Positions 1,827 to 51,812 are shown, counted from the first letter of the stretch. The stretch is DNA of 64,000 nt from Trichoplax adhaerens (GCF_000150275.1 NW_002060947.1:5802604-5866603), one strand, 5' to 3'. Numbers and translations are program-made. Notes: generated from the letters alone by a model not told the origin.

Positions 1827-4800
1827 ATGACATTCAAAATTGGTAGCATTTTCTTGATTGCTTTGGTAAGTTTAAGACTTAACCAGTAATCTTCACTTTA
1901 TCTACATTTAAATTTAGTACGAAGGATTATTTGTATTATTGTACAATTTACAGCTTGATTAATATGTTAATATCGTCAATCTTTTCCTAAGAAATCAGTT
2001 TATTAAGGCGTTATTACTGTAAGGCAACGCCATTTTTTTAAGAAGCAACGATTTATGAACAATCCTAGTAGAAAAGGCTCTGTAGCGTACATAGAGCATA
2101 TAAAAATCCTTTGCAGTCTTAGAGCAATTAATCATCTGCGTGATCTTTAAGATAATGTCATTTTAGGGCCTGAAGATTGTTAAGCTACAAAATTAATGCT
2201 AGTTGTTGTAACATAGATACTAAGCAAAGTCATCACTTAGTAAAATGGTATCTGTGATCGTACAGCGCTTTTACGGTCATAAGTCTTATGATATCATTTT
2301 AAGGTTATCATTTTTTATCATTTATGCCAGAAAACGTTTTGTAGATGCTGCTCAACCTATATTAAATGGTGTATGTAGCTTACAGTAACTTTTATATTCA
2401 CAAGCCTTTGGGTAACATCGCAGAGTTTGATGATTTTGATAGTATTTCACGCAATATTTATACTGGATATGCCGTGTATGATATTAAATCTTAGCTCTAA
2501 ATAAATCTCTAGCCCTAAAAATGTTGCTAAATTCATAAACATGAAGATAGTATAAATTGCTGGAATATAGATTATTCTTTATAATACCTGTAATGGTATG
2601 AGAGAAGGCTAAGTAGACAACATTGAGCCTAAGCATAATTATACCTTAGTATTATAGAATTTCATAGACAAGTAAATCTCGTGTTAAAGATGGTTTGAGG
2701 CATTAACGATTAATAAAGTCACTGTTATATTGGTGGGTAGATAAAGATTCTGTAAGCAAAATTGAATATAGACAATAATTACCCTAGGTTTTCGTCTAAT
2801 TGTACACTTATGAATTTAGGAATAACGCAATAAGAGTTTGATAATTGTCCATATTTCAAGTATTTATGCCAGGAAAGATTCTATACGCTATTTCCAGTCT
2901 ATTATATGACAGTGAAGCTTACTGTCACTTATTTTGTTGTGAACCTTACGAAAGACTATAAATCTAGTGAAGGACGTTCGATATGACTTATTGCAAAAAT
3001 TGTGTTATTTAAATATTTTCTCTCAACATGGTTTTGATTATGCAATTTCAGTGCATTTCAAACTTTAGAAGGCGTTTGTACTATAGAATAAATTGATGTG
3101 CCAGATTACGAAGGGTGTAATGCCTTAATGTTTCTCGTAAAGTAGCATTAACTAAATTTTATTCGTGTTATATTAATTAAATCTTAGTTCCAAAAGGTCT
3201 TGTCGCCCCAAAATAACATTTTACGCCATGCTATTCAAACTTAAATGCTTCAATTTTTCTAGTAAAAATATATCAATATAAACTCTATCCATTTATCCCA
3301 ATTTATTCCAATATTTGAAAGACCCTTACAACTTTCAAAAACTTTTGCATAATGTCTGCAGAATACTTTTAAATCATTTGGCATGTAGCTAATTCTAATA
3401 GCTGCGCACTTGTCGCCATTTATCTTAAGTTTATACTTTCCAACTTATCGTGACTCCCATCCTGTATGAATTTGAAATATAGATAACCTTATTGGCTCTT
3501 TAGATCATCGCTTTGAATTTAATATTTATACAATTGTTTAACTAACGATTAAAATACCGTAAGACAAATAATCTAGGCTTTAGGAGAAGGCTGATAGAAA
3601 GGGACTTTGTTTATTACATTTTAAATAGATCGTATGGTTTCAAGCGAAGACGGTGCTGAATTTGCCCTTCTCGCGTAAGTTATATTAATGAGATACTTGC
3701 ACCTTTTCTTGATTGCTTATTCACTAATAGAAAGAGATCAATAGCTTTATTTAAAATCATACGATGTATTTATGTTTTTTGTTCAGAAGAATTATTATAG
3801 ATTCTAAAGTTAGTCTTTTTTCTCATTCATTTCTCGAATGTATCAAACGCAGTGGAAAAATTTTGGCTTCGAACGACTTCCAATATTTCAATTTGCTATC
3901 ATGTTCCTAATATAATGATGACAGCTACAAGTGCTCGTTCATATTGCCAATCATTAGGTGGTGATTTGGCTACCTTGAATACCTCACTCAAGAATAACGA
4001 TTTCATCTTCTATTACTACACGCAATTTCAACTTGATGAAGACTTATGGATTGGATTAAGGAACAGTTATAAAACTCCAACGCACATAATTAATCAGTGG
4101 GTTAATGGCCAGTCAGTTACGTTTTCAAATTACGCTAATGGTGAAGAAAATAGTGCTACTTACAACTGCTTTGCTATGCAACGCAACAGCACTCATAGCT
4201 GGTATAATGAGCCCTGCAACAATTTACACTATTTTGCTTGTCAACGAAGTAAGAAAGTAACTGTTATTTCATAATTTTTATTTAATGAGAGTTGGAATGG
4301 GATCGTTAGAGTATTGTTAGTGAGAATTTTTGTGCATCTTCTACTAACTTAACAGCGTTTACTTGTACTATAGCGCAAGCTTTTTAAATTATCTTGGTAG
4401 GAAGTAAATATTCACATTTAAATAAATCGATTATGCAGCCTATAGTAGCATATGTGTAAACTGAGAGTCTGAAAGCCAAAATTGCTTTTAGTAGATATTT
4501 GATTTAATTAATTACCCTAAAAATTTTTCATAAGTACATTAGCATTTGGTTCTTAATAGTATTTGGATGAAAGCTGCATTTAAATCGTTCAGGCATTAGT
4601 ACTGCGGAGAACTAATTCTTGTAATCGAATAATCTTTTATACTTTTAGTTTGAAGGTTCACAAAATTTAGAATTAATCATTATTAAGTAGTTCTATGTGA
4701 TTAAATTATCTACCAGCATCCTTTATAAATCTGTATACTGGTATTTAGTTAGGTATAGTATTAACGGCAATATCAATGTTGTACTGAGTATTTGAGATAT

Positions 4801-7265
4801 TTTGCTACTTTATATGCTTGCAGCAACTTTCAATAATGTTAACTATTAGAAGCTAATCATAACTAGATTGAATATTGAAAAGAAATTTTTTTAACTCAAT
4901 TAAGTATAACAAAAAGTTATACATTATTAGCACTCAATTCTTATATTATTAATGATAGTGCGATAACGGTTGTAAAAAAGTTGTTGAGATATTCTCACTG
5001 AAAAGGTTCCATTCTTGAAATTCTTTGATCATATTGGTATTAGAAAAAGAGTTTCAAAAAGGATAGAGAAATTTCAAGCTAGTTTTTTCGTGGATCTTGG
5101 CTAAATAGCTTCAATTTGCAATCTCTACATTATTATTAAATAATCCAAGAGAATAACAGCGTCTATATAAGCAGTAATGAAATTGAGGGTACTCAGAATA
5201 ATATTAATTGCCGCTTCNNNNNNNNNNNNNNNNNNNNNNNNNNNNNNNNNNNNNNNNNNNNNNNNNNNNNNNNNNNNNNNNNNNNNNNNNNNNNNNNNNN
5301 NNNNNNNNNNNNNNNNNNNNNNNNNNNNNNNNNNNNNNNNNNNNNNNNNNNNNNNNNNNNNNNNNNNNNNNNNNNNNNNNNNNNNNNNNNNNNNNNNNNN
5401 NNNNNNNNNNNNNNNNNNNNNNNNNNNNNNNNNNNTGCTTGTCGAAATTTTGCAAGGAGGATGGAGATTTGGCTATTGTCAATAACGAGGAGCTCACTAA
5501 TATTTTTCATGGCTTATATTTCCATTGGTCTATAACGGCTTGGATTGGTCTTGAAGATTTATTGGGTAAAACTGATGCTGCAAGCTATATCTGGGTAGAT
5601 AATTCAACAACCAGCGCTTACAATGATTGGGCATTTCCTACCGTACTTCTATTTCGCTGCGTTATGTTATACCCTATTTTTGGCAGATTTCAATGGTATG
5701 ATACATCATGCAGTATGATGGCATGGTGTTTATGCGAGAGAGGTTAATATGGTTATATGGTAGTAATTACTTATACAAGATTAGCTACTCTAGTTGATGT
5801 TTGAAAATATTTTTGTATTGTTAATAAAACGTCATTTCCCCTTAAATCTTCGAATAAGTAATGCACGACTAAATTTAACTCCTTGTAATAATTATATTTA
5901 TTTTCTTATCTTCTCAATAAGCTGCACAAAATTATTCCATTACTGTTCAAGAACCATCTCCGTCACCATCCATAGAATTCTACTTGTATAATTCCATAGC
6001 AATCATTCAAGGCAGTGCAAATTCAGGTAAATTAGAAAGGAAACTAAGTTTAAAAGAAATCAAATTCAATAGCAGAAGAGAACTAGTTCAATATATCAGA
6101 GATCCTATTAACCAATTAAATCACAAATAGTAGTTATATCAAAATTTGAATTATATATAAGGTTTTGCGCTTAGTAGTTGTTAAATGCTTCTTCAATTTC
6201 TTATCAATTTATAAAAATTTTCTGCTGATTTGAGCAAAGTTTTACGGTAGTATAGAACTGTAACATTTAAATTATCCTGTCAAATTTGATTCACATTGAT
6301 AGCATTCTAGAAAGATTTATGACTGTAAATTAGTAAATTTATTAACAAATACCAATTACAAGTATTTCAACTTTTAGATTATGGTAGATTTGACATTCAA
6401 ATTAAAAGTGAGATAACTATGCAATAATTTATTATCTTTCTCTGCTACTTGTAAAGTTTCGGTAGATTACGCATAAATTCTATTTTGTGATAATTTATAA
6501 GTAAATATTTTGTAAATAAACTTTCCCATTCAATTAGATGTACTACAGAGAGACTAGTATACAGAATGTAAAATTACGTATTTTATTTATTACTTATATT
6601 GCAAATCATCACTTTGTTCAAATTTTAGATTGAAATGTGTTTTACGATGATATTCACAAATGCTGTGCTTTATATCTCAGCTGTTTAAGGAATTTTATTG
6701 AGAGTTCATGCATATTGTAGTAACAGCTTACAAGTAATGATGGTAACAGTCAGCTACCTAATTTGATTATATTTATTATGTATAGAATAGGAATTGTAGG
6801 AGTAGGAACTAGTGGCTTTAATAACGATTTGTTAAATCAAATATCGTAACGCAATAGATTAAAAAATCTTAATAGGCTTTTAAAATGACTTTGTTTGCAT
6901 GAAGACTAATGTTACAACGATTAATATTTTAACTGATGGATATTATCCTGATCACTACAGCTAATTCACGCCGTTCCGAATAGTTTTATAAATCGTAACT
7001 CATTAACAATATTATCTTGATATGCAATTATTAATTAATTTTACATTGGTTACTTTTATAAAATTATATAGTGCAAGTTTCCTACCAGTTTGTATCAACG
7101 ATGGAAATTAGTTCTATACCATTGAAATCATATAATGGTATTTCTCGTAGTCAGTGCGCTGTCCGTTGCACCATGGCCACTCTATGCAGTCAGTTTGGCT
7201 ATACTAATTCCCAAAACGAAAACTATGCAAATAATTGCCATTTATACGTAAATTCCTCAAATTGA
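1827..7265 (+). CDS. Unit 1: secreted tandem C-type lectin (SP-CTLD-CTLD-linker-PAN/apple-like), 6 exons
   Basis: Exons: 1827-1865 (MTFKIGSIFLIAL, phase 0), 3629-3674 (IVWFQAKTVLNLPFS), 3853-4248 (CTLD1: EKFW, CQSLGGDLA, WIGL, WYNEPC, FAC), CTLD2 from inside the N gap to 5742 (GDLAI, WIGL, WYDTSC, CLCE), 5922-6026 (linker QEPSPSPS), 7072-7265 (C-x3-C-x5-C-x2-F-x-Y...C-x-LY, stop). Visible junctions are GT-AG with phases 0,1,1,1,1. The 5' part of CTLD2 is hidden by the gap. Confidence 0.85.
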
Positions 7266-11274: not shown

Positions 11275-12553
11275 ACTGTCCAGAATATTATTTCCAATAT
11301 GAAAATCGTTACTTTGCGGTTGATATGAGTATAAATAACTTTGATAAGGCCCAATCTCAATGTAAAGCGACTTATTCTAGTGGTGATTTAGCTATGATCA
11401 AAAATCTGGAATTAAGTACTGCTCTAACTGGTTATTTATTTTAGCTACCAACCAATGCTTGGATTGGCTTGCGGGATTTACATAACCTCGATAGTAAAGA
11501 TTCCTTTGTTTGGTTTGATGGAAAAACTGCCAATACCTTTACCAATTGGGGAAATTTCTCTTCGAATTCTGATCAAAGTTGTGTCTGGATAAATTGTAGC
11601 TTGGAAAACAAATGAACCAGTACTAAATACAATTATGCTGCTTATTCGCTATGCGAATTAGGCATTTTCTTTACTATCAATGATACCGTGCTATCCCTAC
11701 TTTCAATTAAATCTAACATCTATGTTATTAATTTACATGTTAAGCATGTTTAACAGTAAATCAGAAATCTGTGCTATTAGTTTTTAATGATAACGTTTAA
11801 ATACTTTTTTCAAAGTTAATCAATTTATATATAGGCTTTCTGTTTGGAAGCAATGTAACGATTTTATTTTAAAATCAATAGTTACTAATTTATGCAGCTC
11901 CATGTTATAACAGCCATCATAATTAAAAAAACTGTTGAATTTTAATTTGGATGGACAACGCTGCTGTAAATTTGCCTACTACTAGGTAGCAAAGCAATAA
12001 ATGCAATTGAGCCTGCGACTACGCAGGCATCACCATCTTCAACTATTTTTCCGGTCACTTCCACACCATCATCGTCCTCAACATTACATGTGGTCATTCT
12101 GGTCTATACCAACAGCTTTGGAACACCAATGCTATTTCAGGTAAATTCTATGGAGAAAACGGTGGCAAGGTAGCGGAGGGATGCACAATGTATTTCACAA
12201 TTTTTATATATAATAGTTCACGTAATATAGATGAAAGATGCTATTTTCGTCCAAGTAATCATTAAGAAATTAGAGCAAACAGAGTAATTTTAGTTCGTTT
12301 TTTTAATCTAGCAATTCAAGTAATGTATACAACCATGATTCCACCAGCCGAAGAGTTAGTACTACCGATCGCAAGTTTTACAGGTATATCCGTCCATCAG
12401 TGTGCTCATATTTGTACAGGCCGCCAGGTTTGTCATCGGTTTAGTTTTAAAGGAACGCTAGAGAATTCGACAACCGACAACATCAGCACATGTATCTTGT
12501 ATACCAGTGTGACAAAATCCGATCGCGAAAATTCCAAAGTTGTAGAAAATTAA
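11275..12553 (+). pseudogene. Unit 2: C-type lectin/PAN pseudogene (CTLD2, linker, PAN exons)
   Basis: CTLD2 exon 11275-11661 (DCPEYYFQYENRYF, GDLAMI, WIGLRD) has stops TAG 11442-11444 and TGA 11613-11615, a Cys>Tyr change and a GC donor. The Ser/Thr linker exon (~11898-12140) is frameshifted. The PAN exon 12312-12553 is intact. Confidence 0.85.
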
Positions 12554-21438: not shown

Positions 21439-23726
21439 ATAATTACTGCAGTACAGCGGATGCTGTTTGGATTGCCATTAGGAAGTGAGTGCTCTATTTA
21501 ATATTATATTAACTAGAGCACGCTATTAAATATCTCCCGGCGATAACCTTACAAATTTTTATAGTTCTAAAGGAGATTGATGTTGGTTAATTTCTGATCA
21601 CTAGATATTTGTACTTTTCTGTTATCGTTTATAAAATTAGTAATTCGCTCCCAATTTTATGCATAATGAATAAATAGTGGACAAATCTTGGATTCGAAGC
21701 TATCCAACTTATCCAGTCTGCCATCATATTCCTGATATTCAGATGAAATTTTCTCAAGCTCGCACATACTGTCAGTCATACGGTGGCGATTTGGCTATAT
21801 TCCAGTCTGGGAACATGAGCATTTATTTCAATTTTAAGACTATATTCTATAGCAATTTTGGCTTGCAAAATGATACCTGGATAGGACTGACTGATCTTCG
21901 CATATCAGAATCGGAAAATCAAGCTCAGTGGATTAATGGCCAGATAGCAAACACATCTAATTTACAACCAGGTCAACCTGATGGCGCAACAGAAGATTGC
22001 TATGCGATTAATGGAACTGGAAATCAAGAATGGTTTGATGATTACTGCAATAAATTGAAATATTTTGTATGTGAGAAAGGTACGCTGATATGATAGAATT
22101 TGGATGGTCATTAATAAATTAGATTGATGACGAATTTTAAGATTAAGATACAGAATTAGTTAACCTATATAATTAAATGTCATGTACTGTGATCGAGGTC
22201 AATATCATCAAGATAAAGATTGTTAATATATTCATTTTTCATATTTTTGAATTAGTTTGTAATGATTCTCACATTCAGTACGAAAATCGACACTTTTTTG
22301 TCTATGAATCTTGGGTAACTATGATAGTAGTCGACAAATTTGCCAGAATTACACCGAAGGAGGAGATTTTGCAATGCTAGATAATGCTGAGATAAATAAT
22401 GTCTTCAATCATTATTTATATTTATGGTCCTCTTCGATGTGGATGGGACTGAGAGATATTAATAACGAAGATAATATAAATAAATTTGTTTGGGTTGATG
22501 GTACTTTGGCCGATACATATACAAATTGGGGTGCCTATATACCATTATCAGATCGAGATTGTGGTCTTATGGCAAGAATTGGTCAGGATTATAAATGGCT
22601 AAACCTTGCATGTAATATATTTTTGGCATCACTTTGTGAGTTCGGTAAGTGTAATCTTCATTTGTAATCCGCCTTTATTAAAGTAATATTGAATAATGAT
22701 AATCTATATTTATATCATTCATTAGATCTCATTTCTTTCATTAGAATCAGCTTCTACACCAGTCTCACCTACTTCTGCTCCTTCTGCTATTACTACAGTG
22801 CTTTCTCACTACTATAAACAAATGGATATTGAAGCTGAATATACAGGTGCGACGGATATTGGTAGAATTTGAGAATAATTTAGACTAGTTTATAAACATT
22901 TAACAGGGCATAGATTCGCATAAATTATAATTGAACGTATAAGTCATATTCAGTATTATTAAAACTGAATCGAATTTATTCAAGCTCCTGTTTGTATAGA
23001 ATTTATTACTTTATAATTCTATAAAAATAGATAGATAGTATATTAATCTAATAATAAATATAAAGTAATATACCTGATTTTAATGTAATTTAATCGGATA
23101 CAAAATAATTGATATTCTACTGTTGCGATACTGTAGCGATTTTCAGATACATTGAATCCACTAGATGAGCTAGCTTATGGACAATGCAGTCTTTTGACCA
23201 ACGTCCTGTTTTAAGTCATACTTTCTTTAGATATACTGTATACCTTACTACCGAAGCATACTATTGATAGCAAAGAGACATCGGACTGATACCTAAATTT
23301 TGCGTAGTACCATACCTGCTAGTAGCCTATTGGTTGAATAAATATTGCATTTTGTGATAATTGTGCAAATTTTGCTATTCATAAGGCTATTTTTTTACGA
23401 CCGTGGTGATCGATTGATTATATTGTTAGTTTGGTAGTGTATATTTATAATGAAGGAAGTGGTAAATGCTAAAGAATAGCAGATAAAATATATGTTATAC
23501 ATATTTATTGTTATGCTATTTAATGTTAAACATAGCTACTGGTACTTTTGGACTCCTTGCTTCATCTAATACTTCCACACTGGTGCCAATAATTTCTTAC
23601 CACGGGGTTTCACGCCTTCAGTGCGCTTTTTATTGCATGAAAAATACTATGTGTATTCAGTTTACCTACAATTATACCGTAGGTAATACTTCTAATGAAA
23701 ATATTTGCACCCACTATTCAAACTAA
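21439..23726 (+). pseudogene. Unit 3: C-type lectin/PAN gene with a single frameshift (pseudogene or sequencing error)
   Basis: Exons: 21439-21484 (IITAVQRMLFGLPLG), 21678-22079 (CTLD1 with QPD), 22256-22644 (CTLD2, 1 nt missing at ~22308-22311), 22745-22846 (STPVSPTSAPSAITT), 23536-23726 (PAN). The first coding exon was not located. Confidence 0.8.
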
Positions 23727-31531: not shown

Positions 31532-34371
31532 ATGCCAAAAGTTTTCAACCTGCTTTTTATTTTACACTTTGTGAGTACGATTTATGCCGTTATACTAACA
31601 ATTGTTGCTGTTATATAAAACACTTAAAGAATGGTTGACATAAAAGTTAAAATATTTAAACTCTGAAATCGTTGCTTGATATCCATAATATCGTTAAACT
31701 TTATCATTGCCAATTTTGAAATTTCATTCTAATAACCTAATAAATTAACTGATATTTCAAGTTATTTGGATGTTCTTTGTGGACTGCATGGGCTGGCCTT
31801 CCTAATGCAAGTAAATAGTAATTTTAGATAGATAACTTGTTGAAATTTGGCAGCTTTAATACCTATTTTAGGGTTAATGTTATTTTTATTTCTACTGCAT
31901 ATTCTAGAGTTAAGATATAAATCTATTTCCGTTCTTAAAGGATGAATTCTAGCTAGAAATATTAAGTTCACGTGAATTTATTGATCACTTTTACACTTAT
32001 AGTGGACAAATTTTGGTCACGAACACTGCCATCTATCGACTTATGCTACCGTGTATCAGATCATATGCATGATTTTTCAAACAGTCGAAGTGATTGTCAA
32101 AAATTTGATGGGGACTTAGCTGTCTTTGATGTCTATGAAAAATATTTTCATTTTAGAGAAATTTACTATGAAAAGCTAGGATTAAATCAGCATATGTGGT
32201 TTGGATTAAGAGATCATCATGGAGACGGACCAACTGTCGAAAGAAGGTGGATTACTGGTTCTTTCTTAGCTTATCAAAAATTTTTGGGAGAACCTCCTTC
32301 TTCTACTGGAACTTCAGATGATTGCTATATTAGTTCTGCGTTTGGAGATCATTTGTGGATTGATGATTTGTGCAGTCAGCTTCGTTTTTTCATCTGTGAG
32401 AAAGGTAATGCATGCAATCTAATATTTACACTGATATAATTTAGGTCAATCATACTAACCTTGATGAAAATATATGATTCCTTTATCGAGTACACTGCTG
32501 GTATACTACAGCTTTCCTATATTCGCAAATCTATCATATGAGTATCTAAAGCTTCTGCCCTTAAAACTTTGGTCAGGCCGGAAATTACTACAGTTATTAC
32601 AGTCTAATCAATTTTTAATCCTACCTAATACTTTATAAAATTACTATGAATCTGTTTCTCGACGTTGTTTCCAAGTAAAGAACGATCTCGATGCTAATAT
32701 TAGCTTCGCGCTATGTTGATTAAAGTTTCACCACGTTAATAATTTTATTAAACTTTAATTTTACTGTTTACTTGTAATAGCTTGCAGCTATGATTTGGAA
32801 TACAGTAATCGCTATTTTACCATCAATCAAGTCAATAGGACATGCGATGAAGGTAGAAACTATTGCCAATCACACGGTGGAGATTTAGCTATCATTAACA
32901 ATAGCGATTTGACCGATTTCTTGTCTGGCTATCTGACATGGACTCAATCAGTCTGGATTGGTTTGCGAGATATTAACAGTCTAGATAACTTCAATGCTTT
33001 CGTTTGGGTTAATGGAACTGTCGCTAGTAGTTATACGGATTGGGGTGTATATAGTCAAGACACTAAACGTGATTGTGTTCTTATTCAGAAGAATAATGGC
33101 AAGTATAACTGGATTAATGTAGACTGTAATAGAACTTCGTGGACCCTGTGCGAATTTGGTAAATACTGTAGCTCCATTATATAAAATTAATTTATAACCA
33201 TATCCCAAATCAGCTGTTAGCCACTTCCATCTTTCATTTTTTAATTTGTCATTGAGTTAAAAGTTTCGGTACCTTAATTCTGCTCCTTTGATTTCATGGC
33301 AGTATTATTATTGACAAATTAAATTATAATATTCAATGTTTTTAGGTACAAGACCAGTTGCATCAACGACCGCTTACAGAACGACTCTTTCCACTAATAC
33401 AGGAACCAATGCAGAAGAAGGTACAGAATCAACCGAAACAACTGATATATTTGTCCAAACACAATATTTTTATATAAAATCGATATTGGTGGATGCAGCT
33501 AATTCAGGTAAGCTTCATAAAGGAAGTAGCCTGTGAGTTATGAAACTGCTTAAAATAGCAAGTTAAGATGTTATTTATTGAATCTATAGTCAAGATATTT
33601 AAGAAATATCAAGATTTGAGCAGTATTTTTGTGAAATCTCTAGAATTTTGACTTAGCTATCCCCATGCAATATTCAATGTAGACAAGCAATATAATCCTT
33701 ACATAATGCGCTTTATGGAGAAATGAATTTACTTTCTAAACTATGCTATTGCAACGTCAAGTGACGTATAAGGCAGAATAGTTCTCTAAATACGTCTTTC
33801 ATAATTTTATAAGAAGTAGTATAGTCAAAGACAGCAATGAACAACAAATACGAATGACACTTTACTATATATGCCTAAGCAAAAGGAAAAATTCTACTAC
33901 AGTATTCCTGAAATATTTATTATTATAAAGATTAATCTACTTCTATTCACGCAATAAAAGTTAGCAAGCGTTATCCGTTCTAGATGACTTAGTGTTATAC
34001 CCTGCTTAAATTTACTTTCACGATAGATATTTACTTATTAAACGGTACCAATAGGATTCGTTATTTTGTAGATAATAACCATATCTTAAAAATGGAATAA
34101 TTTATTCAATAGTCTATTGATAGCCAGTGGTTTTAATGAAAATGGCTGCTAAGATTGATGTAACGATTCTTTAGTTCAGATTGATTTCAAGCCGATCTTA
34201 CCTCCATCCACAAATGACTTACTAGCGACTACTAAAATGCCAGGTATCACGCGTCAACAGTGTGCATTCTTTTGTGCAAGATACAATATTTGTGATCAGT
34301 TTTCCTATAACACTACAAAACTTAATAAACCGATGAATAATATTTGTATTTTGTATACTACAACTTATTAA
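31532..34371 (+). CDS. Unit 5: intact secreted tandem C-type lectin with mucin-like linker and C-terminal PAN/apple-like domain (408 aa)
   Basis: Exons 31532-31570, 31762-31810, 32003-32404, 32781-33158, 33346-33507 and 34175-34371 total 1227 nt, in frame with no internal stop, all GT-AG. N-terminus MPKVFNLLFILHFLFGCSLWTAWAG is signal-like. C-terminus is GITRQQCAFFCARYNICDQFSYN...ICILYTTTY*. Confidence 0.92.
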
Positions 34372-37654: not shown

Positions 37655-38813
37655 TACGGATTGGGGTGCGTAAAGTCCAGACACTAAGTATGATTATGTT
37701 CTTATTCAAAAGAATAGCGGCATTTATAATTGGATTAATGTAGAGTGTAATAGAACTTCATGGACTATGTGTGGATTAGGCAATATAATAGCTCTATCAT
37801 ATAACATTAATTTGTAATGTTTCCTGAATCAGCCGCTAGCAATTTTTATCTTTCGGTTTTAATTTGCCATTGAGTTAAAAGTTACAGCATCTGAATTTTA
37901 CTCCTTTAATTTATAAGGCAATAGTGTTATTTAAAAACTAAAATTATACTGTGCAATTTATTTAGCTACTAAACCAGTTATCACAACAGTAACTTATACT
38001 ACAACTCTTTCCATTCATGCTGGAAACGAAATAGAAGAAGTAGAATTAACTACAACAACTGAAATATTTGCCCAAAAGCAATACTTTTATGTAAAATCGA
38101 TATTGATGGATGCAGCTAATCCAGGTAAGTTTGAAAATGGAAGTGACTTAGTGGTTGTGATCTGTTTAAAAATAAAAGGTAAAAATTTTATCTATTGAAT
38201 TTGCAGTCAAGCCCTGAAATCTTTCCTTAGCTATCAATATACGGTGTTAAATATTCACAAGCAAGATACTCCTAATCGTTATGCAATACAACATATAAAG
38301 AAATGATTTTTACTTACAAACTACTTTATTGCAATGTAAAAAGGCACTTATGATACGATTATTCTTGAAATATGTCATTCGTAACTTTAAAAGAAAATCG
38401 TATTCGAAAGCATCAATAAACAACAAATATAAATAATACTTTACTGTTTGTACCTAAGCAAAAGATAATAATTCAACTACAGTATTCATGGAATGGTTAT
38501 TATTAAAAAGATCAAAAGGATTCTATTTACTCAATAAATACTAGTAAACGTTCTAGAAAATTTAGTTTAGTTCGTTGCTTAAATTTTCTCTCGTGATAGA
38601 TATTTGCTTGAAGCTGTGTTGTGTATAGCATTTGTTATTTCGTAGATAATAGCCATATCTTAAAGTTAGAATAATTTATTTAGTGCTTTGTTTATAGCCA
38701 ACGATTTTAATGGAGATGGTTATTAATATTTATTTAACGATTCTTTTGTTCAAGCCGATCTTACCAACATCCATAGATGGCTTACTAGCGAATAATCAAA
38801 TGCAAGATATCAC
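37655..38813 (+). pseudogene. Unit 6: truncated duplicate of the 3' half of unit 5
   Basis: Aligns with ~33033-34248 including introns. The CTLD2 3' part has TAA at 37671-37673, a Cys>Tyr change and a GC donor. Linker exon 37966-38124 is intact. The PAN exon has lost its acceptor (TTAG>TTTG) and is cut at ~38813. Confidence 0.88.
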
Positions 38814-40356: not shown

Positions 40357-43300
40357 TTGAAAAATTTTGGCTGCAAACTAATCGAGACCAAACTCTATGT
40401 TATAATGTTCCTAATGTAACCTACGATTTTAACGATGCTCAAGCACATTGCCAACTATATGGAGGTAACTTAGCTATATTAGATGCTGCTAATAAGAGTG
40501 ATTCACTAACCGGAATCTACTATGGTAAACTTGGTCTTGACAAGAGTTTATGGATTGGATTAGTCAATATTCAGTCTAAGCATGCTAATATTACTCAATT
40601 TTGGATTAATGGTATAAAACCAACTTACACTAATTTTGCATATCCACCCGATGGTACTATTCAAGATTGTTATTTAATGGACGCAAATAGTACACATAAG
40701 TGGTTTCTCGAGTTATGTAGTAACCAGCATCACTTTCTTTGCCAAAAAGGTAATAAGATTCATGATTAAATTATTCAGACTATATTTATTAGCTAAAAAT
40801 TAAACCGAAATCATCCGAAATTACTCGTATTCTACCTGACATGACAAGATATTATATGGATTGCTCTTACTATAAATTTTAGGATTTATATAATATGTAA
40901 TTTAGAGAAAACTGTCCTTAAAATAATAGTAAATCACCAAAAATTGCAGAATTTACATAACAGTCAATACAGGCCAATTTCAATATATCTGATAAAATTA
41001 AATTGTACGTTCTATATGGCGGAATATTCAGCATGCAATATAACACATGAAAACGGAATTCAACCTATAACAAATTTTTATATTAGGAGTGTGTCACAAA
41101 ACAGCTTTGCAACAAGGTAACGTAATGTACGATCAATAAGTTAATTCCTTGAACTACGTATCAAGAAACGATATCTGCACTATCACAAATACTTTTGCTC
41201 TACTGGCAGATTACACAAATACTTAGACGCCTCGTATTTTACGTTAAATACCAAGTTTGAGAATCCACTTTATTACACGATATACTGCATTTATATACCC
41301 TTCCTTAATAGTTCATGAGTCATAGTTAGTACGATTAACTTTGGAATCATTTACTGAATTAGATATTAATTTTAGCTACTGCTCCCTTAATGCAGATAAC
41401 AGTATTTACGAACATAGATATCTGATGACTAATACAGAATAGTCAGATTACGATATGTCCTATCACGGAACATTTCCACGATATTTTACAATCTACCATA
41501 AGTAAGTCATAATCGCAATGATTCGAACTGTAAGTAGATGATTTGCTTTCCCTATTATAACTGTTAATTTCAGTATGTATATATGTGTCACTGTCATAAA
41601 ATGTCAGTGTTACATTAAAAAACGGTATATCCAAATTAGAAGTTAACTAAATAAGGATAGTCTAACAGAATTATCCTAACATAGATATTTCTACTCTAAT
41701 ACAGTATATAACACTGTTACAGGGTGGCATGGAAAATATGAGTCAGGCTTATTTTTGTAATTTTTTTAGATCTTAAGAACGAAATATAAGATATTTTGCT
41801 TGATAATCAAGAAAGGTCCATATAATTTCATCATTTAAACCATTTTAATGCAAACTTTCTATTTCAAAACAGTTTTGCGATAAGATAACATAATTTACGG
41901 CCAACAAGTCACATCCTTAAATCACATGTTAGGGACAATGTCTACATAATCGTGAACACTTTTCCTCTGCTAGCGAGCAACGTAAAGACTTAGATGGCTT
42001 ACAGTTTACGTTAAGTTTAAACCTTAAGAAATCTATTTATTGCACAATATATCATATTTATATGCTCTTTTACAATAGTTCAGGCGACCTAGAAAGTACT
42101 GTTAAATTTAAAGCTCTCCAAAGCATTAGAGACTAATTTTATCTACTGCTACCTAATGAAGGTACTAGCATTTAGAGACATAGACGTCTAATGACTAATA
42201 CAAGGTAATCAGATTATACCATGTTCATAAACGGAATATTTTTAAACTCATCTACAATCTAGCATTAGTTAGTTACAGTCATAGTGATTCGAATCGTAAG
42301 TTGATTATTCTCAAATCCCTTATATAGCTATTAATTTGGCTATGTATAAATATCAGTCATTTATCACTGTCTTACAAAAAGCCAATACTACATTAAAGCA
42401 CAATATATCAGAATTAGAATCTGACTAAATAAGATAACAAAATTATCTCGTCTTTAACAATTACTCATGTAGTTCTGGTTATGGCATATTTGTTGATATT
42501 AAACTAATTTTTAACCTAACATATTACTTATACTTGTGACTCTACATGGTACCGTAAAGATAGAACTTTTATTACCACAGACACATCTACAAATTTTCAC
42601 CACAGAGCTAAACCCAAAGGTTTGTGTTTATATAGAAACTTTCTAATTTGTAAGCAAGAACTCTACTAATATTATAACTTACTAGGAGAGACATCTCGAG
42701 CTGAGTTGTTCCTTAAATAGCTTTTCTATCAGTAAATATTTTTAATCTCTTACGCGTGATTAATCTTAATCTAAGCGTGCGTATTGTCTAATTTAACTAT
42801 CAATAGCTAGAACTTGAAACGATCAATGTCAAACGTGCAATAAACTATCACAAATAATATCCACATTAAGGCATTACTCATCCTCCAATCTCTACAATAT
42901 GGATATGTTTCCATATTAGCTACTACTATACGTATTAAACTACCTTAGCGGTAAAGTAACACCGTAACAGATATCTTCGTCTGATGCCTGATATGTTCAA
43001 ATCATTTTAAAGTTTAAATGTATGACAGTACCAAACCTTGCTAATTTAGTAATATCATTTATGTGAAGTAAGATGAACTTTGACAGAAGTAAGACAAAAT
43101 TTTTAAATTTTCTTAATTAAAAGACTATGTAGATTGCTGATAAAAATCTATATCAATGCATTAAATCTTTATAAATCTAATTACTTTGGTTCTAAGTTAT
43201 CGGTTTAAAGATTTTTAACTTACATTATTTAGCTATTTTAATAATTTATATGCGATAAGCAATAGGAATACAAGAAATACGTATAATCTCAACCGATTAA

Positions 43301-44828
43301 TAACAATAGCTCGAATCGATTAATTTGATGGCTTCTATAACTTATTATTTATTAACAGCGGTCGGATTTAAAGATTGACTAAGATTTACCACTGATACGT
43401 AACTCCTCTTTTTAAAGTTTTACTTTTCTATTTAATTTTAGACTGTGATTACGATATTGAATATAGGAATCGTGGCTTTACTTTCTATGAAGATTTTCAA
43501 AATTGGACAAATTCGAGAAAGTCCTGCATTGATAAAGGAGGAGATCTCGCGATTATTAATAATGCCGAATTAGCAACAGTATTTGATAGTTACTATCATG
43601 GAAAGACGATGTACATCGGCTTACGTGATCTTTATGATTTCAATATTTCCACACAATTTGTTTGGGTTGATGGTACGATGGCTAGCTCTTATACCAATTG
43701 GTTAAATGGTGTTAGCTTTATTTATGATTGCGTGATACAAATTTATATGCCAATCATCTATTACAGCTTTCGTTGGATATCATTACCGTGCAACTATACA
43801 TTATTTAGACTCTGTGAAAAACGTAAGATTAGATTTTTCAAATCCATGTTAGATGTAATGCATGTATAGATATTAGAGTATTCACGCCTTTCGTATATGC
43901 ATCTTATAAATCAGTCAGTAGAACTACGACATCGTAATGGATGAATATTTGCAGCTTATATTTAGATATCTTTTCTATTTTTAGCTTTAAATACATCTAC
44001 AAACTTGAATTCCGATAATCCGTTTTTGGTATCGTCGAGTCTACATTATTTTTATTCTAGGCAACAATCATCGTTTCCCACCATCGATAAGAACATAGGT
44101 AATATGAGGTAATTGCTTGTATATTTAACATGCTTCTATTGTGAGTAATAATTTCATGTTTTATCTCAATTTTACTTTGTCAAAATTAAGACAAACTTAA
44201 AATTGATAGATTAGCATCATTTATAGTATAAGATTGGTTAGGTAGCATGTCGGGAATCTTCAAAATAGTATAATTAAATTTGGTGCTGATCTAGTGATCG
44301 TAGGTGGTAGTGAGTTAAATGAATGTTATTAATGATATCTTAGTTACATTTATATTTTTTAATGAAATGTAATCTACGTACGGGTAAATATTCACTACTT
44401 CAGTAACGGATAATTAAACAGTTACTAGTTTATCTATTTATTTCTGCTTATTAATCGTTACTAAACTGGAATAGTTTGGTGCAAAATAGCTGCGAAAATA
44501 GCGTACGAGATTACCTAGACTTTAATATTTTCATTTTTAAAGCAGATTATTGTATTCAACACTGAAATATATCTGATGTAAAGGATATAGCGATACCAGT
44601 TCTAATTATCTTTTGGGATTTTTTTCTACTTTCGATGTAGTTAAAGATACATATATATATGCGACTTGGGATAATGAGCTTCAAGTGCAGGTAATAGATT
44701 CCTTTAGTGGTATCTCTCGTCATCAGTGTTCCATACGCTGCTCACTTAATAATTTTTGCCAAAATTTTAGTTTTAATCAAACTAGCGCTCTGAATTTCGA
44801 GTCTACTCTTTGTACACTGTATACTTGA
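40357..44828 (+). CDS. Unit 7: C-type lectin/PAN gene (domain exons intact, leader exons unresolved)
   Basis: Exons 40357-40749 (CTLD1 EKFWLQT...WIGL...FLCQK), 43442-43822 (CTLD2 DCDYDIEYRNRGF...YIGLRD...LCEK), 43985-44098 (linker) and 44641-44828 (PAN CSIRCSLNNFCQNFSF...CTLYT*) are all open and phase 1. Candidate leader exons at ~40085-40242 do not give a clean frame. Confidence 0.82.
41420..42440. repeat. Degenerate direct repeat in unit 7 intron (41420-41660 vs 42185-42440; short related piece at ~19958-20005)
   Basis: Shared TGACTAATACA...TCAGATTA...ATGT...ACGGAA...TACAATCTA...TGATTCGAA...AATTAGAA...ACTAAATAAG. Confidence 0.6.
42548..42969 (-). mobile_element. Truncated family E solo-LTR-like element (inverted relative of 49560-50110)
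   Basis: The minus strand starts TGTTACGGTGTT and shares GTAAGAGATT...ATTTACTGATAGAAAAGCTA...CCTAGTAAG...TATATAAAC...AATAAAAGTT with 49560-50110. The 3' terminus was not found. Confidence 0.7.
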
Positions 44829-44839
44829 TTCTATGTATG

Positions 44840-45269: not shown

Positions 45270-45335
45270 GTATGTTAGCCATAATTTCTTTAGCACAATA
45301 TTATTGTATATGTATACCATGAATTAGTATAGTTA

Positions 45336-48900: not shown

Positions 48901-48973
48901 TTTATTTCGATTAAAATTCAAAAGCTGACCAGGTCTTTAAAATTCATATTGTATTAATCCAAAATTTATAAAG

Positions 48974-51812
48974 TTAAGAAATTTTGGCTTCAAATCAGCA
49001 TTACAAATCCTGCATGATACCATGTTGCTGATTTACAGTTTACCTTTAGTGAAGCTCGATTTTATTATCAATATCACGGTCGTGATTTAGCCATACTCAA
49101 TTTGGAGGAAAGCTTACATCATTTGGAAATAAGTTTTTCATAAGCTTGGTTTAAAAAGCAACGTTTGGATTGGGTTAAAAATGAAAATTTGACCGGTTAT
49201 AACAATAGACAAATTTGGATTAATGGGACTGTCCCTACATATACTAACTACTTGTAAGCACCCAATGGAAGTGTAGAAGATTGCTATCTTATGCGATATA
49301 CCCATCCATATTCATGGTATAAAAGCCCCTGCAGTTCTACTGAATACTTTATTTGTGAAAAAAAGTAATTTACTTTTCTGGCCGATGATGTTTTACTTGG
49401 ACTGTTATTATACCACTTAATTAAAGTCCATTCTCTATAATAATATAAAATATATGATTATATTGCGCCCAAATTTCATATGTGAAATGTATTTTTACTC
49501 GTAAGTTAATATTCATACAGAACTTAATTAAAATTTAATAGCTCTATGAAGTAACTAATTGTTACGGTGTTGCCTTGTCATTAGGATAGTTTAATAAGTA
49601 CAGTAGTAGCTAGTATGAAGAATATCCATACTTGTAGTGCTAGGTAAGATAAGTAATGCCTTAACGCGGATGTCGTTTGTAATAGTTCATTACATATTTG
49701 ATATTGATTGTTATTGTGTGATAGATAGCAGTAAGATGATTCAAACTCTAGTTGATGATAGTTGAATTGGACAACCTACGAGCTTAGATTAAGATTAAGT
49801 ATGAGTAAGAGATTCAAAACATTTACTGATAGAAAAGCTATGTAAGGAACATCTCAGTTCGAGATGTTTCACCTAGTAAGGTATAATAAATAATACTGTT
49901 GTTGTTTACAAATTATACGGTTCCTATATAAACGGGAACATTTGAGTTGAGTGGCGTGGTAAAAAGTTGTAGATGTATCTTTGCTAATAAAAGTTTCATC
50001 TTTACAGTATTTTGCTGTGTGTGTTTAACGTTAAGTAAAAGGGGGTTTAAGTCTGTAGCTACTTATAGACTTACTGTACGTTACCTTGTCGCAGAAATGA
50101 AATTGTGACACTAATTTGCAAAATTCTTTTGTTATATTACTTAATTTATGGTATATTTATTTGATTAATTCAATAATACAGTAGATCCTTCTTCGGCATT
50201 CAGATAATAAGTACGTCATGATGGATACTTCTTGCAGACAATTGTAGATCGCAGTAAAATTAACTTTATTTCTCGCAACTTAAGTGTTTCATTATTGAAA
50301 AATTGTCATTACAATAACTTATATACAATATTTTAAAAAATTAATAATCTTGACCTTTTGCCTTAAAGCTTTAGTTTGCGATTTAGGTTCTATATTCAAT
50401 ATTAGATAAGCACAGTAATTCTTAGCCTTTTTTAAATTTATGACATAACGCTTAAATTAGCCTAAATAAATGCTGATTACATTAAGTTAAGAGAAATGCA
50501 TTTTTGTACTTCATGATCACTATATGTAAATGGTAAGCTTTAAGATTAAGCATTCAGTAATTTTGCATTCTCTATTAAATGTCTTAAATATTCGTCTAAA
50601 ATTGATTATCTATTTATCGCAGTGGATTGCTTTTTCACAGTCAAGAATGAGAATCGATTTTTTACCTATAGGACTGCTATTGACAATTACAATGAAAGTC
50701 AACTATGGTGTATTACTAATGGTAGTGATTTGGCGATCATTGATAATGAGGAACTAAGCATTATATTTAATGCTGTATTTTATTTTGGGATTATATTTGT
50801 TGGCTTAGTAGATGAGTACGGTTTAAACAATTATACGCAGTATGTCTGGGTAGACAATATTATAGCTAATACTTATATTAACTAGTATAATTTCCTCCTA
50901 CTTCCTGATGATGAATGCACTGTGCATGTACATTTGCATCCAATTTTTGATCCTATCAAATGGGTTCCATTGGCGAGCAAACTGCTACATCCTGCATTAT
51001 GCGAAGATAGCGAATACGGTATGTACAATCAGGTCCTGAAACGAAATCCAAATTATTTAAAATTTATCATAAGCAGGAAATGTTTGAATATTCATTTCTA
51101 TTATTTTTCAAATAGCTTTGTCACAGGTAGACATCAGCCATGAAAATGATAAGTCAAATTCCATTCTTTAATTTTGCATCTGAAAGCAATCAAACTTTAA
51201 AGCAGTTCTTGCAGGTAATAAGCTTTTATAAGCGATTGAAAGCTGGCTCTTTATAAATGGTATCTAGAAGCATGAATATTGTAATTCCTATAGTTGTTTT
51301 TAAGTAGCATGCATTATTACTAATAAATCTAGTCAATAAACTACTCATTATAAGTAAATTCCTGAAATTGTAACATTTTGGTTAATATACTTGTGGTATT
51401 AAAATTTACGGTTAGTGAGGTTTACTGCTACAGTACTCTCCAGCACTATTTTATTAAGTCAAGTATTGGTGAAATTGAAAAGTTCTAAATACTGCATCAT
51501 ACTAGAGTCCTCTTAATAAGTTTATACTGATGGGCATGATGACATGGGATTAAGATAACGACAACAAAACTGATAATGTTTCTTCAACATCTTTGTAGTC
51601 GAAGATATTATGTCTTGGCTTCATCGGCTACAAGCAATCAGACGACAGTCTCGACATCCATTCTAAAGATATCAATTAAAGGAATATCTTGTGTTTGTTG
51701 TTCAATATATTCTTCGTTAAACAAATTTTGTCGATGTTTAAGTTATAAGAATTATAATTTAATCGATTATAATATTAATACTCGCGTTCTTTTTCGATTT
51801 TGTCATGTTTAA
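48974..51812 (+). pseudogene. Unit 8: C-type lectin/PAN pseudogene
   Basis: CTLD1 48974-49364 (Cys>TGA at 49015, frameshifts, further stops), CTLD2 50623-51018 (Trp>TAG at 50883-50885), linker 51116-51214 (stops), PAN 51599-51812 (frameshift, lost cysteines). Confidence 0.88.
49560..50110 (+). mobile_element. Solo-LTR-like element, family E
   Basis: TGTTAC...GTGACA ends, 5-bp TSD CTAAT, TATATAAA 49925-49932, AATAAA 49986-49991. Confidence 0.85.

What the first reader, a model, noticed from the sequence alone, without database searches (positions are those of the whole stretch)
1827..51812. 50-kb tandem array of a secreted CTLD-CTLD-mucin linker-PAN/apple lectin family under birth-and-death evolution
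Seen: eight same-orientation copies of one six-exon architecture, with intact, gapped, frameshifted and dead copies side by side and very divergent protein sequences. Several exons (leaders, most linkers, unit 5 PAN, unit 7 CTLD1) are absent from the ORF track. No transmembrane segment is present in the intact copy. Established: CTLDs are invertebrate pattern-recognition modules, PAN/apple domains bind protein or glycan, and CTLD plus PAN-3/CW pairings occur in nematode lectins. Inference: this is a lineage-specific, diversifying family of soluble recognition proteins (immunity, symbiont or food recognition, mucus). I do not recognise this exact domain order as a named family.
Basis: partly seen in the sequence, partly recalled or inferred. 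Interest (0 to 1): 0.85.

Follow-up and report, generated by a model that had tools for sequence, protein, structure and literature searches.

The report
Placozoan secreted CTLD-CTLD-PAN lectin gene cluster
This stretch of the Trichoplax adhaerens genome holds a tandem cluster of old, very divergent genes and gene wrecks for secreted proteins made of two C-type lectin domains, a short sugar-coated stalk and a PAN/apple domain; it is a real but largely unannotated lineage-specific lectin family of a kind common in invertebrates.

Summary
The window is Trichoplax adhaerens scaffold C1410:5802604-5866603. Between 1.8 and 51.8 kb, all on the + strand, lie eight units of one gene plan: two leader exons, CTLD1, CTLD2, a Ser/Thr-rich linker and a terminal PAN exon. 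There is also one orphan PAN exon. Unit E (31532-34371) is proven: RNA contigs from three studies join exactly six exons with GT..AG introns. They give a 408-aa protein with an N-terminal signal peptide and no other hydrophobic segment. Units A, D and G look intact apart from assembly gaps. Unit C carries a 1-nt deletion that an alternative-haplotype scaffold lacks. Units B, F and H are dead. The terminal exon is PAN/apple. Its profile retrieves almost only PAN proteins from 1.84 billion clusters, it hits TgMIC4 apple domains in the PDB, and its model aligns best to factor XI and kallikrein apple domains. Paralogues share only 23-46% identity, except one 55-56% PAN pair. The 50-N gap at 27333-27382 hides about 1.6 kb that includes unit D's CTLD2. 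Function (soluble glycan or particle recognition) is inferred. Diversifying selection is not shown. One paralogue (TRIADDRAFT_56679) and a Trichoplax sp. H2 entry with CTLD plus PAN are already catalogued but uncharacterised.

The parts
1827..1865 (+). Unit A exon 1 (predicted leader, 13 codons, then GTAAGT)
   Evidence: It has the same length and phase as the RNA-proven exon 1 of unit E.
3629..3674 (+). Unit A exon 2 (predicted; hydrophobic, ends ..NLPFS)
   Evidence: It is homologous to E exon 2 and to residues 11-25 of TRIADDRAFT_56679.
3853..4248 (+). Unit A CTLD1 exon
   Evidence: Pfam Lectin_C E 4.7e-16. Phase-1 splice sites.
5436..5742 (+). Unit A CTLD2 exon; its 5' end is lost in gap 5218-5435
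   Evidence: Lectin_C E 1.9e-5. No other scaffold covers the gap.
5952..6026 (+). Unit A linker exon (predicted)
7072..7265 (+). Unit A PAN exon with stop codon
10256..10458 (+). Orphan PAN exon (B0). No CTLDs lie upstream and no stop follows the domain.
   Evidence: It is 55% identical to a second orphan PAN exon at C1410:5741461-5741670.
11275..11669 (+). Unit B CTLD2 pseudo-exon with in-frame stop codons
12312..12553 (+). Unit B PAN exon
   Evidence: PAN_1 E 6e-4
21439..21484 (+). Unit C exon 2 (predicted). A weak candidate for exon 1 lies at 21335-21355.
21678..22079 (+). Unit C CTLD1 exon with QPD...E...WFD, like tetranectin
   Evidence: Lectin_C E 9.8e-17
22256..22644 (+). Unit C CTLD2 exon with a 1-nt deletion near 22310 compared with scaffold C1275
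22745..22861 (+). Unit C linker exon (predicted)
23536..23726 (+). Unit C PAN exon
   Evidence: PAN_1 E 4.8e-4 and 21.6 bits in the genome scan
25564..25833 (+). Unit D predicted leader exons (25564-25602 and 25785-25833)
25976..26437 (+). Unit D CTLD1 exon, interrupted by gap 26258-26432
27333..27382 (.). 50-N gap that hides about 1.6 kb, including unit D's CTLD2 and linker exons
   Evidence: C1275:5030-6673 bridges the gap. CTLD2 lies at C1275:5929-6357 and the linker at 5574-5699.
28106..28299 (+). Unit D PAN exon
   Evidence: Its allele is the C-terminus of TRIADDRAFT_62580.
31532..31570 (+). Unit E exon 1 (from the ATG; transcripts start at or before 31486)
   Evidence: RNA contigs of runs X6 and X7
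31762..31810 (+). Unit E exon 2
   Evidence: Joints 31570/31762 and 31810/32003, GT..AG
32003..32404 (+). Unit E CTLD1 exon
32781..33158 (+). Unit E CTLD2 exon
33346..33507 (+). Unit E Thr/Ser-rich linker exon
   Evidence: Joints seen in runs X6, X7 and X8
34175..34371 (+). Unit E PAN exon with stop codon. The 3' UTR runs on unspliced to at least 34755.
37655..38813 (+). Unit F: a partial copy of E 33034-34250 (CTLD2 tail, linker, start of PAN). It ends at a dispersed repeat.
   Evidence: 71% DNA identity
39836..40045 (+). Unit G predicted leader exons (39836-39871 and 40000-40045)
40357..40749 (+). Unit G CTLD1 exon
43442..43822 (+). Unit G CTLD2 exon. The 2.7-kb intron before it holds repeats.
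43985..44098 (+). Unit G linker exon (predicted; carries the YFY motif)
44641..44828 (+). Unit G PAN exon
   Evidence: Its allele lies on scaffold C1038.
48974..49354 (+). Unit H CTLD1 pseudo-exon with stop codons
50623..51018 (+). Unit H CTLD2 pseudo-exon with an internal stop at 50883-50885
51576..51812 (+). Unit H degenerate PAN-like exon. The cysteine pattern is broken and there is no Pfam hit.

Best explanation
This is a placozoan-specific tandem cluster of genes for secreted, modular lectin-like glycoproteins. It has eight units in the window and at least one full gene plus an orphan exon 60-70 kb upstream. Each gene encodes a signal peptide split over two small exons, CTLD1, CTLD2, a short Thr/Ser-rich stalk that is presumably O-glycosylated, and a C-terminal four-cysteine PAN/apple domain. 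Every domain sits on its own exon between phase-1 introns. The unit could therefore be built by exon shuffling and then multiplied by tandem duplication. The duplicates are old (23-46% amino-acid identity, except one 55-56% PAN pair). About five are still potentially functional (A, C in one haplotype, D, E, G). Three units plus an orphan exon are decayed (B, F, H, B0), which is a birth-and-death pattern. The proteins are most likely released from secretory or epithelial cells and bind glycans or proteins on microbes, food particles or the animal's own mucus layer. The two CTLDs and the PAN domain would act as independent binding modules held apart by the stalk.

Shown here: the gene structure, splicing and transcription of unit E, the domain identities, the secretion signal, the lack of a membrane anchor, and the copy states.

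Inferred: secretion in vivo, glycosylation, ligands and biological role.
For: - Organism and locus: (TRIADDRAFT_56679 lies on the 8,573,113-bp scaffold).
- CTLDs: Pfam Lectin_C E 1e-17 to 2e-5. Alignments keep WIGL and the cysteine framework. The nearest solved relatives are tetranectin, CD23, DC-SIGN and the DEC-205/PLA2R CTLDs.
- PAN, sequence evidence: single exons score 18-20 bits against PAN_1, whose cut-off is 21.4. Two exons exceed the cut-off in the genome scan. The profile of seven exons found 38 proteins among 1.84 billion cluster representatives. Apart from family members these are true PAN proteins: P0002, P0004, P0009 and P0010, and 24 of 27 further hits. A PDB profile hit is to the TgMIC4 apple domains, E 1.9e-4.
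- PAN, fold evidence: the AF2 model has pLDDT 75 and a strand-helix-strand-strand order. An unbiased structural search of 48,161 chains ranks the factor XI and plasma kallikrein apple domains first (Z 5.3). Eight of the top 12 rows are PAN/apple, MANEC, HGF-N, MIC4 or plasminogen entries, and a ninth (SML-2) is recalled from memory as PAN/apple.
- Splicing: three studies' RNA contigs give five GT..AG joints. The spliced frame is open for 408 codons. Only the N-terminus is hydrophobic, and introns 2-5 are phase 1.
- Leaders with a shared GLPxx end occur in A, C, D, E, G and TRIADDRAFT_56679.
- Divergence among copies. Dead copies.
- Restriction to this locus.
Against: - No binding, localisation or cell-type data exist.
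- Canonical Ca2+/sugar motifs (EPN or QPD plus WND) are kept only in unit C's CTLD1. They are absent from all CTLD2s, so sugar binding is not assured.
- Foldseek gave no significant PAN match, and the structural Z-scores are modest.
- Only unit E has transcript evidence. RNA contigs cannot show expression level.
- Units A and D cannot be read through their gaps.
- The signal peptide was judged by hydrophobicity only. No SignalP run was possible.
Confidence: 0.78

Rival explanations
1. The proteins are structural or adhesive parts of the placozoan mucus or glycocalyx (matrix cross-linkers) rather than recognition molecules for foreign targets. The CTLDs and the PAN domain would bind the animal's own mucins.
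For: The Ser/Thr stalk is about 190 aa long and repetitive in the paralogue TRIADDRAFT_56679. Most CTLDs lack canonical sugar-site residues. PAN modules often mediate protein-protein contacts (PMC5297725).
Against: Structural matrix genes are usually conserved. These copies share mostly 23-46% identity, decay often, and show many nonsynonymous polymorphisms. Known placozoan mucocyte markers are a gel-forming mucin and an intelectin, and this family is not among them (PMC12013895).
Confidence: 0.15
2. Most of the array is evolutionary debris. Only one or two units (E, and TRIADDRAFT_56679 upstream) are working genes. The apparent intactness of A, C, D and G is untested prediction.
For: Only unit E has RNA support here. 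C has a frameshift in the reference haplotype. A and D are broken by gaps. pN/pS is near 1 in E.
Against: G is open through all predicted exons. The allele of D is open on C1275 and is modelled as TRIADDRAFT_62580. Exons that are 23-46% identical yet still open, with conserved cysteines and splice phases, imply long-term purifying selection on several copies.
Confidence: 0.2
3. The terminal exon is not PAN/apple but an unrelated small four-cysteine knot, such as a defensin-like or toxin-like peptide.
For: Single-exon Pfam scores fall just under the PAN_1 cut-off. Foldseek finds nothing significant, and defensins appear among the weak structural hits.
Against: The profile search returns almost only PAN proteins. 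The PDB profile hit is to MIC4 apple domains over the C-x3-C-x5-C-x2-F-x-Y core. The top structural hits are apple domains that cover nearly the whole model (59-60 of its 64 residues aligned).
Confidence: 0.05

Closest known systems
TRIADDRAFT_56679 (XP_002112548.1, UniProt B3RWA5) and its Trichoplax sp. H2 orthologue RDD38244.1
   Same: It is a paralogue on the same scaffold, about 68-72 kb upstream. It has the same order of signal peptide, CTLD1, CTLD2, Ser/Thr linker and PAN, and the same leader and PAN motifs.
   Different: It is 28-41% identical to the window units. Its linker is about 190 aa, repetitive, and fused to the CTLD2 exon. Public annotation gives only Lectin_C. The H2 name 'Macrophage mannose receptor 1' is an automatic misnomer.
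Trichoplax sp. H2 'CTLD gene products without a TM' (Kamm et al. 2019, Dataset S3C: TrispH2_009650, _009651, _009652)
   Same: These are three neighbouring predicted CTLD proteins without a transmembrane segment, each with a Phobius signal-peptide call (SignalP agrees only for 009650). One carries IPR003609, which is PAN/Apple from my own knowledge of InterPro. They are probably part of the orthologous cluster.
   Different: They are only listed in a supplement. No architecture, cluster size, pseudogenes or expression are described. I could not test orthology to particular window units.
Nematode class IV C-type lectins (1-2 CTLD + 1-2 CW/PAN-3; 16 in C. elegans)
   Same: Secreted proteins that pair CTLDs with PAN-superfamily modules, in large lineage-specific expansions (PMC5297725).
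   Different: The nematode module is the CW/PAN_3 type. The window exons match PAN_1 and PAN_4, and did not match PAN_3. The nematode proteins have no Ser/Thr stalk. The pairing is almost certainly independent.
Apicomplexan apple-domain lectins (Toxoplasma MIC4)
   Same: It is the best PDB sequence match of the PAN profile (4a5v) and is among the top structural matches (4a5v, and 2ll4 in complex with lacto-N-biose). These hits show that PAN modules can themselves bind sugar. The Sarcocystis lectin SML-2 (2yil) is also a top structural match; that it is a PAN/apple protein is my recollection, not a tool result.
   Different: These are unrelated organisms and architectures with no CTLDs. No sugar-binding residues were compared.
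Mollusc and cnidarian CTLD + PAN_1 proteins (ESM Atlas clusters)
   Same: Lectin_C and PAN_1 occur together in secreted-type proteins.
   Different: These are feature-based look-alikes only. The domain number and order differ (for example with EGF), and no homology beyond the shared domains was shown.

Membership tests
C-type lectin-like domain (Pfam PF00059) | HMM match above the gathering score | tested here: met
   Scores of 25.8-62.1 bits against a cut-off of 22.6 for CTLD1 and CTLD2 of A, C and E. Genome scan hits cover units B, C, E, G and H and CTLD1 of A; unit D's CTLD1 fragment was found by tblastn only.
C-type lectin-like domain (Pfam PF00059) | Conserved fold framework (WIGL motif and paired cysteines) | tested here: met
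   Alignments. Matches to solved tetranectin, CD23, DC-SIGN and DEC-205 CTLDs.
Ca2+-dependent carbohydrate-recognition domain (functional C-type lectin) | EPN or QPD tripeptide plus the WND and Glu ligands of Ca2+ site 2 | tested here: inconclusive
   Unit C CTLD1 has QPD..E..WFD, aligned to tetranectin. At the same place A has EEN, E has EPP, G has PPD and TRIADDRAFT_56679 has HES. All CTLD2s lack the motif.
PAN/apple superfamily (PF00024 PAN_1, PF14295 PAN_4) | HMM match above the gathering score | tested here: inconclusive
   Single exons score 18.2-20.3 bits against a cut-off of 21.4. The genome scan gives 22.5 and 21.6 bits for two exons. The family profile retrieves true PAN proteins at E down to 6.5e-14.
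PAN/apple superfamily (PF00024 PAN_1, PF14295 PAN_4) | Core cysteine pattern C-x3-C-x5/6-C ... C with the F-x-Y strand | tested here: met
   C29, C33, C39, F42 and C57 are invariant in 12 sequences. They align to the MIC4 apple core. The outer C1-C6 pair of true apple domains is absent.
PAN/apple superfamily (PF00024 PAN_1, PF14295 PAN_4) | Fold: a helix packed on a curved antiparallel sheet | tested here: met
   The AF2 model has pLDDT 75.5. VIA-align ranks the FXI and kallikrein apple domains first (Z 5.3, 59-60 of 64 residues). Eight of the top 12 rows are named PAN-type entries. Foldseek gave nothing significant.
Mucin (PTS) domain | A long, repetitive Pro/Thr/Ser-rich region | tested here: not met
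   Window linkers are 24-54 aa and not repetitive. Only the upstream paralogue has about 190 aa of ESTTSE-like repeats. 'Mucin-like stalk' is the fair term.
Mannose receptor family (automatic name of the H2 orthologue) | Ricin-type domain, FNII domain, 8-10 CTLDs, transmembrane segment and cytoplasmic tail | tested here: not met
   TRIADDRAFT_56679 shows only Lectin_C (two stretches) and PAN_1. Unit E has no transmembrane segment.
Nematode CTLD + CW (PAN_3) lectins | PAN_3/CW-type module | tested here: not met
   No PAN_3 hit for any window exon at E up to 1.

The most novel reading that the evidence does not exclude
The cluster is a placozoan counterpart of the hypervariable secreted recognition families of other invertebrates, such as snail FREPs or amphioxus VCBPs. 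Under this reading, a locus with unusually high allelic divergence, presence/absence and null alleles, and binding-loop diversification lets an animal without dedicated immune cells discriminate food, symbionts and pathogens on its surface. The observed haplotype identity of about 92-99% at this locus would fit.
Probability: 0.12. Interest if true: 0.6.

Novelty: new variant of a known kind. Interest (0 to 1): 0.38.

Why it matters
Placozoans are among the simplest animals and digest biofilms outside the body, so their secreted recognition proteins bear on how early animals told food from symbionts and pathogens. The published immune-gene survey lists only twelve CTLD proteins without a transmembrane segment. 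It mentions no PAN pairing in its text.

This locus shows that a whole tandem family exists with a fixed plan of signal peptide, CTLD, CTLD, stalk and PAN. Most of its terminal exons appear to be missing from public protein models. At least one member is expressed.

The family gives concrete candidates for glycan-array, binding and in situ experiments. It is also a clear example of exon-per-domain, phase-1 modular gene construction in an early-branching animal. Even so, it is an expected type of invertebrate gene family, not a new principle.

Tried and rejected
- Word-based homologue searches with TRIADDRAFT_56679, whole and residues 25-305, returned only the query itself. The low-complexity linker and the high divergence defeat that index, so the blank says little.
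- Foldseek against the PDB gave no significant hit for the 64-residue PAN model. The alignment-based wide search was needed.
- The look-up of encoding contigs could not place TRIADDRAFT_56679. I located it by tblastn on fetched upstream DNA instead.
- Literature searches for the gene identifier, and for CTLD plus PAN domain, found nothing specific.
- I looked for other scaffolds covering gaps 5218-5435 and 26258-26432 and found none.
- I considered that the array might be a haplotype-duplication artefact and rejected it, because the units are under 46% identical. That explanation does fit the 95-98% duplication around gap 15511-15560.
- I considered a hidden membrane anchor and rejected it for unit E. 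The transcript contig runs unspliced for about 380 nt past the stop codon.
- The spliced (joined) unit E protein was computed only inside scripts, to check frame, length and hydrophobicity. All searches used single exons by reference or public protein ids.

Full report
**Where the window lies.** The genome is 105.6 Mb in 1414 contigs, and the window is C1410:5802604-5866603. A family member found by profile search, P0003, is TRIADDRAFT_56679 of Trichoplax adhaerens. It sits on a scaffold of 8,573,113 bp, the length of C1410. G+C is 27-33% throughout.

**Is the array there?** Yes. Pfam finds Lectin_C in the larger open frames at E 1e-17 to 2e-5. It also finds weak PAN_1 matches in short cysteine-bearing frames. 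tblastn with these pieces maps CTLD1, CTLD2 and the PAN-like exon in the same order on the + strand eight times between 3.8 and 51.8 kb. Self-comparison of the DNA finds almost no similarity between units. The one exception is a 71% identical partial copy of unit E at 37655-38813. The units are therefore old paralogues and not assembly duplicates. Amino-acid identity between units is 28-40% for CTLD1, 24-46% for CTLD2 and 22-38% for PAN. One pair of orphan PAN exons reaches 55%.

**Transcripts.** I laid Logan contigs of four runs from four studies on 29500-35499. Three runs carry spliced contigs of unit E: X8, which is on record as RNA, and X6 and X7. The joints are 31570/31762, 31810/32003, 32404/32781, 33158/33346 and 33507/34175, all GT..AG. 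One 1489-nt contig joins CTLD1, CTLD2, the linker and PAN, then runs on unspliced to 34755.

- Joined in a script only, the six exons give an open frame of 408 codons from the ATG at 31532 to the TAA at 34369-34371.
- The only hydrophobic stretch is the N-terminal leader of about 25 residues.
- The protein has 16 cysteines and five N-glycosylation sequons.
- Introns 2 to 5 are all phase 1, so each domain sits on a symmetrical exon.

Contigs cannot give expression level, and I had only one read-laying run, so the other units remain untested.

**The other units.** Splice-site search in the phase set by unit E gives clean exon borders for CTLD1 and CTLD2 of A, C, D and G. It also gives PAN acceptors for A, B, C, D and G. 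The borders of the PAN-like exon at 10256-10458 (B0) come.

- Leader exons homologous to E exons 1 and 2 exist in A, C, D and G. Exon 2 ends in a shared GLPxx motif, also found in residues 11-25 of TRIADDRAFT_56679.
- Linker exons are short, at 24-54 codons. Their first half is Ser/Thr/Pro-rich, and a shared aromatic YFY-like motif follows.
- Unit G is open through all predicted exons.
- Unit B has no leader or CTLD1, and its CTLD2 carries stops.
- Unit H has stops in both CTLDs and a PAN remnant with a broken cysteine pattern.
- Unit F is a 3' fragment that ends at a dispersed repeat.
- An orphan PAN exon at 10256-10458 has no CTLDs before it.

**Assembly gaps (the operators' first question).** Two unplaced scaffolds, C1275 (12.5 kb) and C1038 (6.4 kb), are patchworks of alternative-haplotype sequence from this locus. 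They are 91-99% identical to the window.

- Gap 27333-27382: C1275:5030-6673 bridges this 50-N gap, so the gap hides about 1.6 kb. That stretch contains unit D's CTLD2 exon and linker exon. The public model TRIADDRAFT_62580 is that allele's CTLD2 tail, linker and PAN.
- Gaps 5218-5435 (start of A's CTLD2) and 26258-26432 (end of D's CTLD1): no other scaffold covers them. Continuity and frame cannot be established. The flanks read as intron then mid-domain for A, and mid-domain then donor site for D. Both fit gaps inside exons.
- Gap 15511-15560: it lies between two 95-98% identical blocks in non-genic DNA and does not touch a gene.
- C1275 also shows that the frameshift in unit C's CTLD2 is a single missing T near 22310. 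The other haplotype has that T. It is either a null allele or a sequencing error.

**Is the last exon PAN/apple?**

1. Single exons score 18-20 bits against PAN_1, just under the cut-off of 21.4. Two exons pass the cut-off in the genome scan.
2. Seven exons align with invariant G, C-x3-C-x5-C, F and a last C.
3. An HMM of that alignment, run against 1.84 billion cluster representatives, returned 38 proteins. Five are family members. The others I scanned are multi-PAN proteins: P0002, P0004, P0007, P0009, P0010 and P0011, and 24 of 27 further hits carry PAN_1.
4. Against PDB sequences the only hit is the apple-domain pair of Toxoplasma MIC4, E 1.9e-4, aligned over the C-A-x2-C-x5-C-x-F-x-Y core.
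5. An AlphaFold2 model from 12 sequences has pLDDT 75.5 and a strand-helix-strand-strand order.
6. Foldseek found nothing significant.
7. Aligning the model to 48,161 representative chains puts the factor XI and plasma kallikrein apple domains first (Z 5.3, 59-60 of 64 residues). Further top rows are the HAI-1 MANEC domain, the HGF N domain, MIC4 and plasminogen, plus the Sarcocystis lectin SML-2. That SML-2 is a PAN/apple protein is my recollection, not something the tool states.

The Z-scores are modest. The concentration of one superfamily at the top, together with the sequence evidence, settles the call. The domain has the four core cysteines (C2-C5 of the PAN module) but not the outer pair of true apple domains.

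**The CTLDs.** Both keep the WIGL motif and the cysteine framework. Unit C's CTLD1 aligns to tetranectin with QPD, Glu and WFD in place. The other CTLD1s have EEN, EPP, PPD or HES at that position, and all CTLD2s lack the motif. Calcium-dependent sugar binding is therefore plausible for some CTLD1s and unproven for the rest. The variation sits where ligand contact is made in known C-type lectins.

**Extent of the family.** The PAN-exon profile finds 11 places in the genome:

- seven in the window;
- two allelic copies, on C1275 and C1038;
- two upstream on the same scaffold: the last exon of TRIADDRAFT_56679 at C1410:5734885, and an orphan at 5741479.

The genome holds at least 89 CTLD exons in several other clusters, but the PAN pairing is confined to this region of about 125 kb. 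TRIADDRAFT_56679 has the same architecture with a linker of about 190 aa made of ESTTSE-like repeats. Three short AT-rich contigs from a metagenome assembly and a Logan run carry PAN exons 35-55% identical to the window's. They probably come from other placozoans, but I could not verify that.

**Selection.** Variants seen in the RNA contigs of unit E are 12 nonsynonymous to 3 synonymous, giving pN/pS of about 1.0. Window versus alternative scaffolds gives 4:0 in D's PAN, 1:0 in G's PAN and 1:4 in C's CTLD2. Pooled, that is 18:7 against a neutral expectation near 3.9:1. This indicates weak constraint and is not evidence of positive selection. Paralogue divergence is too deep for dN/dS. Birth-and-death evolution is supported by the mix of live and dead copies. 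'Diversifying selection' remains a hypothesis.

**What is already known.**

- Kamm et al. 2019 (PMC6321704) report twelve Trichoplax sp. H2 CTLD predictions without a transmembrane segment, eight of them with a signal peptide.
- Their Dataset S3C lists three neighbouring loci, TrispH2_009650 to 009652, and the middle one carries IPR003609. From my own knowledge of InterPro that entry is PAN/Apple. The pairing is therefore on record, but it is not discussed.
- No paper in the library mentions TRIADDRAFT_56679.
- CTLD plus PAN-type (CW) proteins are a recognised class in nematodes (PMC5297725).
- Clusters with Lectin_C and PAN_1 exist in molluscs and cnidarians.
- The H2 orthologue's name, 'Macrophage mannose receptor 1', is not justified. 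It has two CTLDs, no ricin or FNII domain and no membrane anchor.

**Verdict.** This is a real, lineage-specific tandem family of secreted CTLD-CTLD-stalk-PAN proteins, with about five candidate working genes and three wrecks in the window. It is a new architectural variant within the well-known class of expanded invertebrate C-type lectins. It is partly catalogued and functionally uncharacterised. The proposed mechanism, multivalent extracellular binding of glycans or proteins on microbes, food or mucus, is inferred from the domains. The ligands, the expressing cells and the mode of selection all remain to be tested.

Noticed in passing
window 13368-17400: Blocks 13368-15510 and 15561-17400 are 95-98% identical, and the second starts right after the 50-N gap at 15511-15560. 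This looks like two haplotypes placed in tandem by the assembler rather than a true duplication.
   Followed up: partly
window 55353-57588 (+): Two long open frames (421 and 299 aa) are full of TPR_12/TPR_10 repeats of the kinesin-light-chain or NPHP3 type. They are probably one gene split by an intron, directly downstream of the lectin array.
   Followed up: partly
G000 scaffolds C1275 (12.5 kb) and C1038 (6.4 kb): These unplaced scaffolds are gap-ridden patchworks of alternative-haplotype sequence from this locus, 91-99% identical to the window. Their pieces map to units C, D, E and G and to a repeat. The gene model TRIADDRAFT_62580 sits on C1275. Haplotype divergence here reaches about 6-8% in unit D's last intron.
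   Followed up: yes
window 44839-45269 and 54312-54753; 20397-20717 and 36070-35750; 42550-42969 and 50009-49560; 13845-14090, 16183-16541 and 38822-39192: Dispersed direct and inverted repeats, 75-93% identical, lie between and inside the units. Examples are in unit G's 2.7-kb intron and at the truncation point of unit F. They are presumably transposon remnants and have no long ORF.
   Followed up: no
window 30691-30847 and 34812-35124: Run X9 has contigs here at higher word depth than any unit E exon. They lie outside the coding exons of unit E and may be a repeat or another transcript.
   Followed up: no
L004:4462-4671 (C1410:5741461-5741670): A second orphan PAN exon lies upstream of the window. 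It is 55% identical to the orphan at window 10256-10458, which makes them the closest PAN pair in the family. No CTLD was detected next to it, and a long run of N follows.
   Followed up: partly
L007, L008, L009 (ENA ERZ27263980 and Logan SRR30664516 contigs): Short AT-rich contigs (27-30% G+C) from a metagenome assembly and a sequencing run encode PAN exons 35-55% identical to the window's. They may come from other placozoan lineages in environmental samples.
   Followed up: partly
window linker exons (for example 33346-33507, 22745-22861, 43985-44098): Behind the Ser/Thr-rich part, every linker exon carries a conserved aromatic motif: YFY, HYY or FYLY here, and RYYSY in TRIADDRAFT_56679. It may be the first strand of the PAN domain, encoded on the preceding exon.
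   Followed up: no
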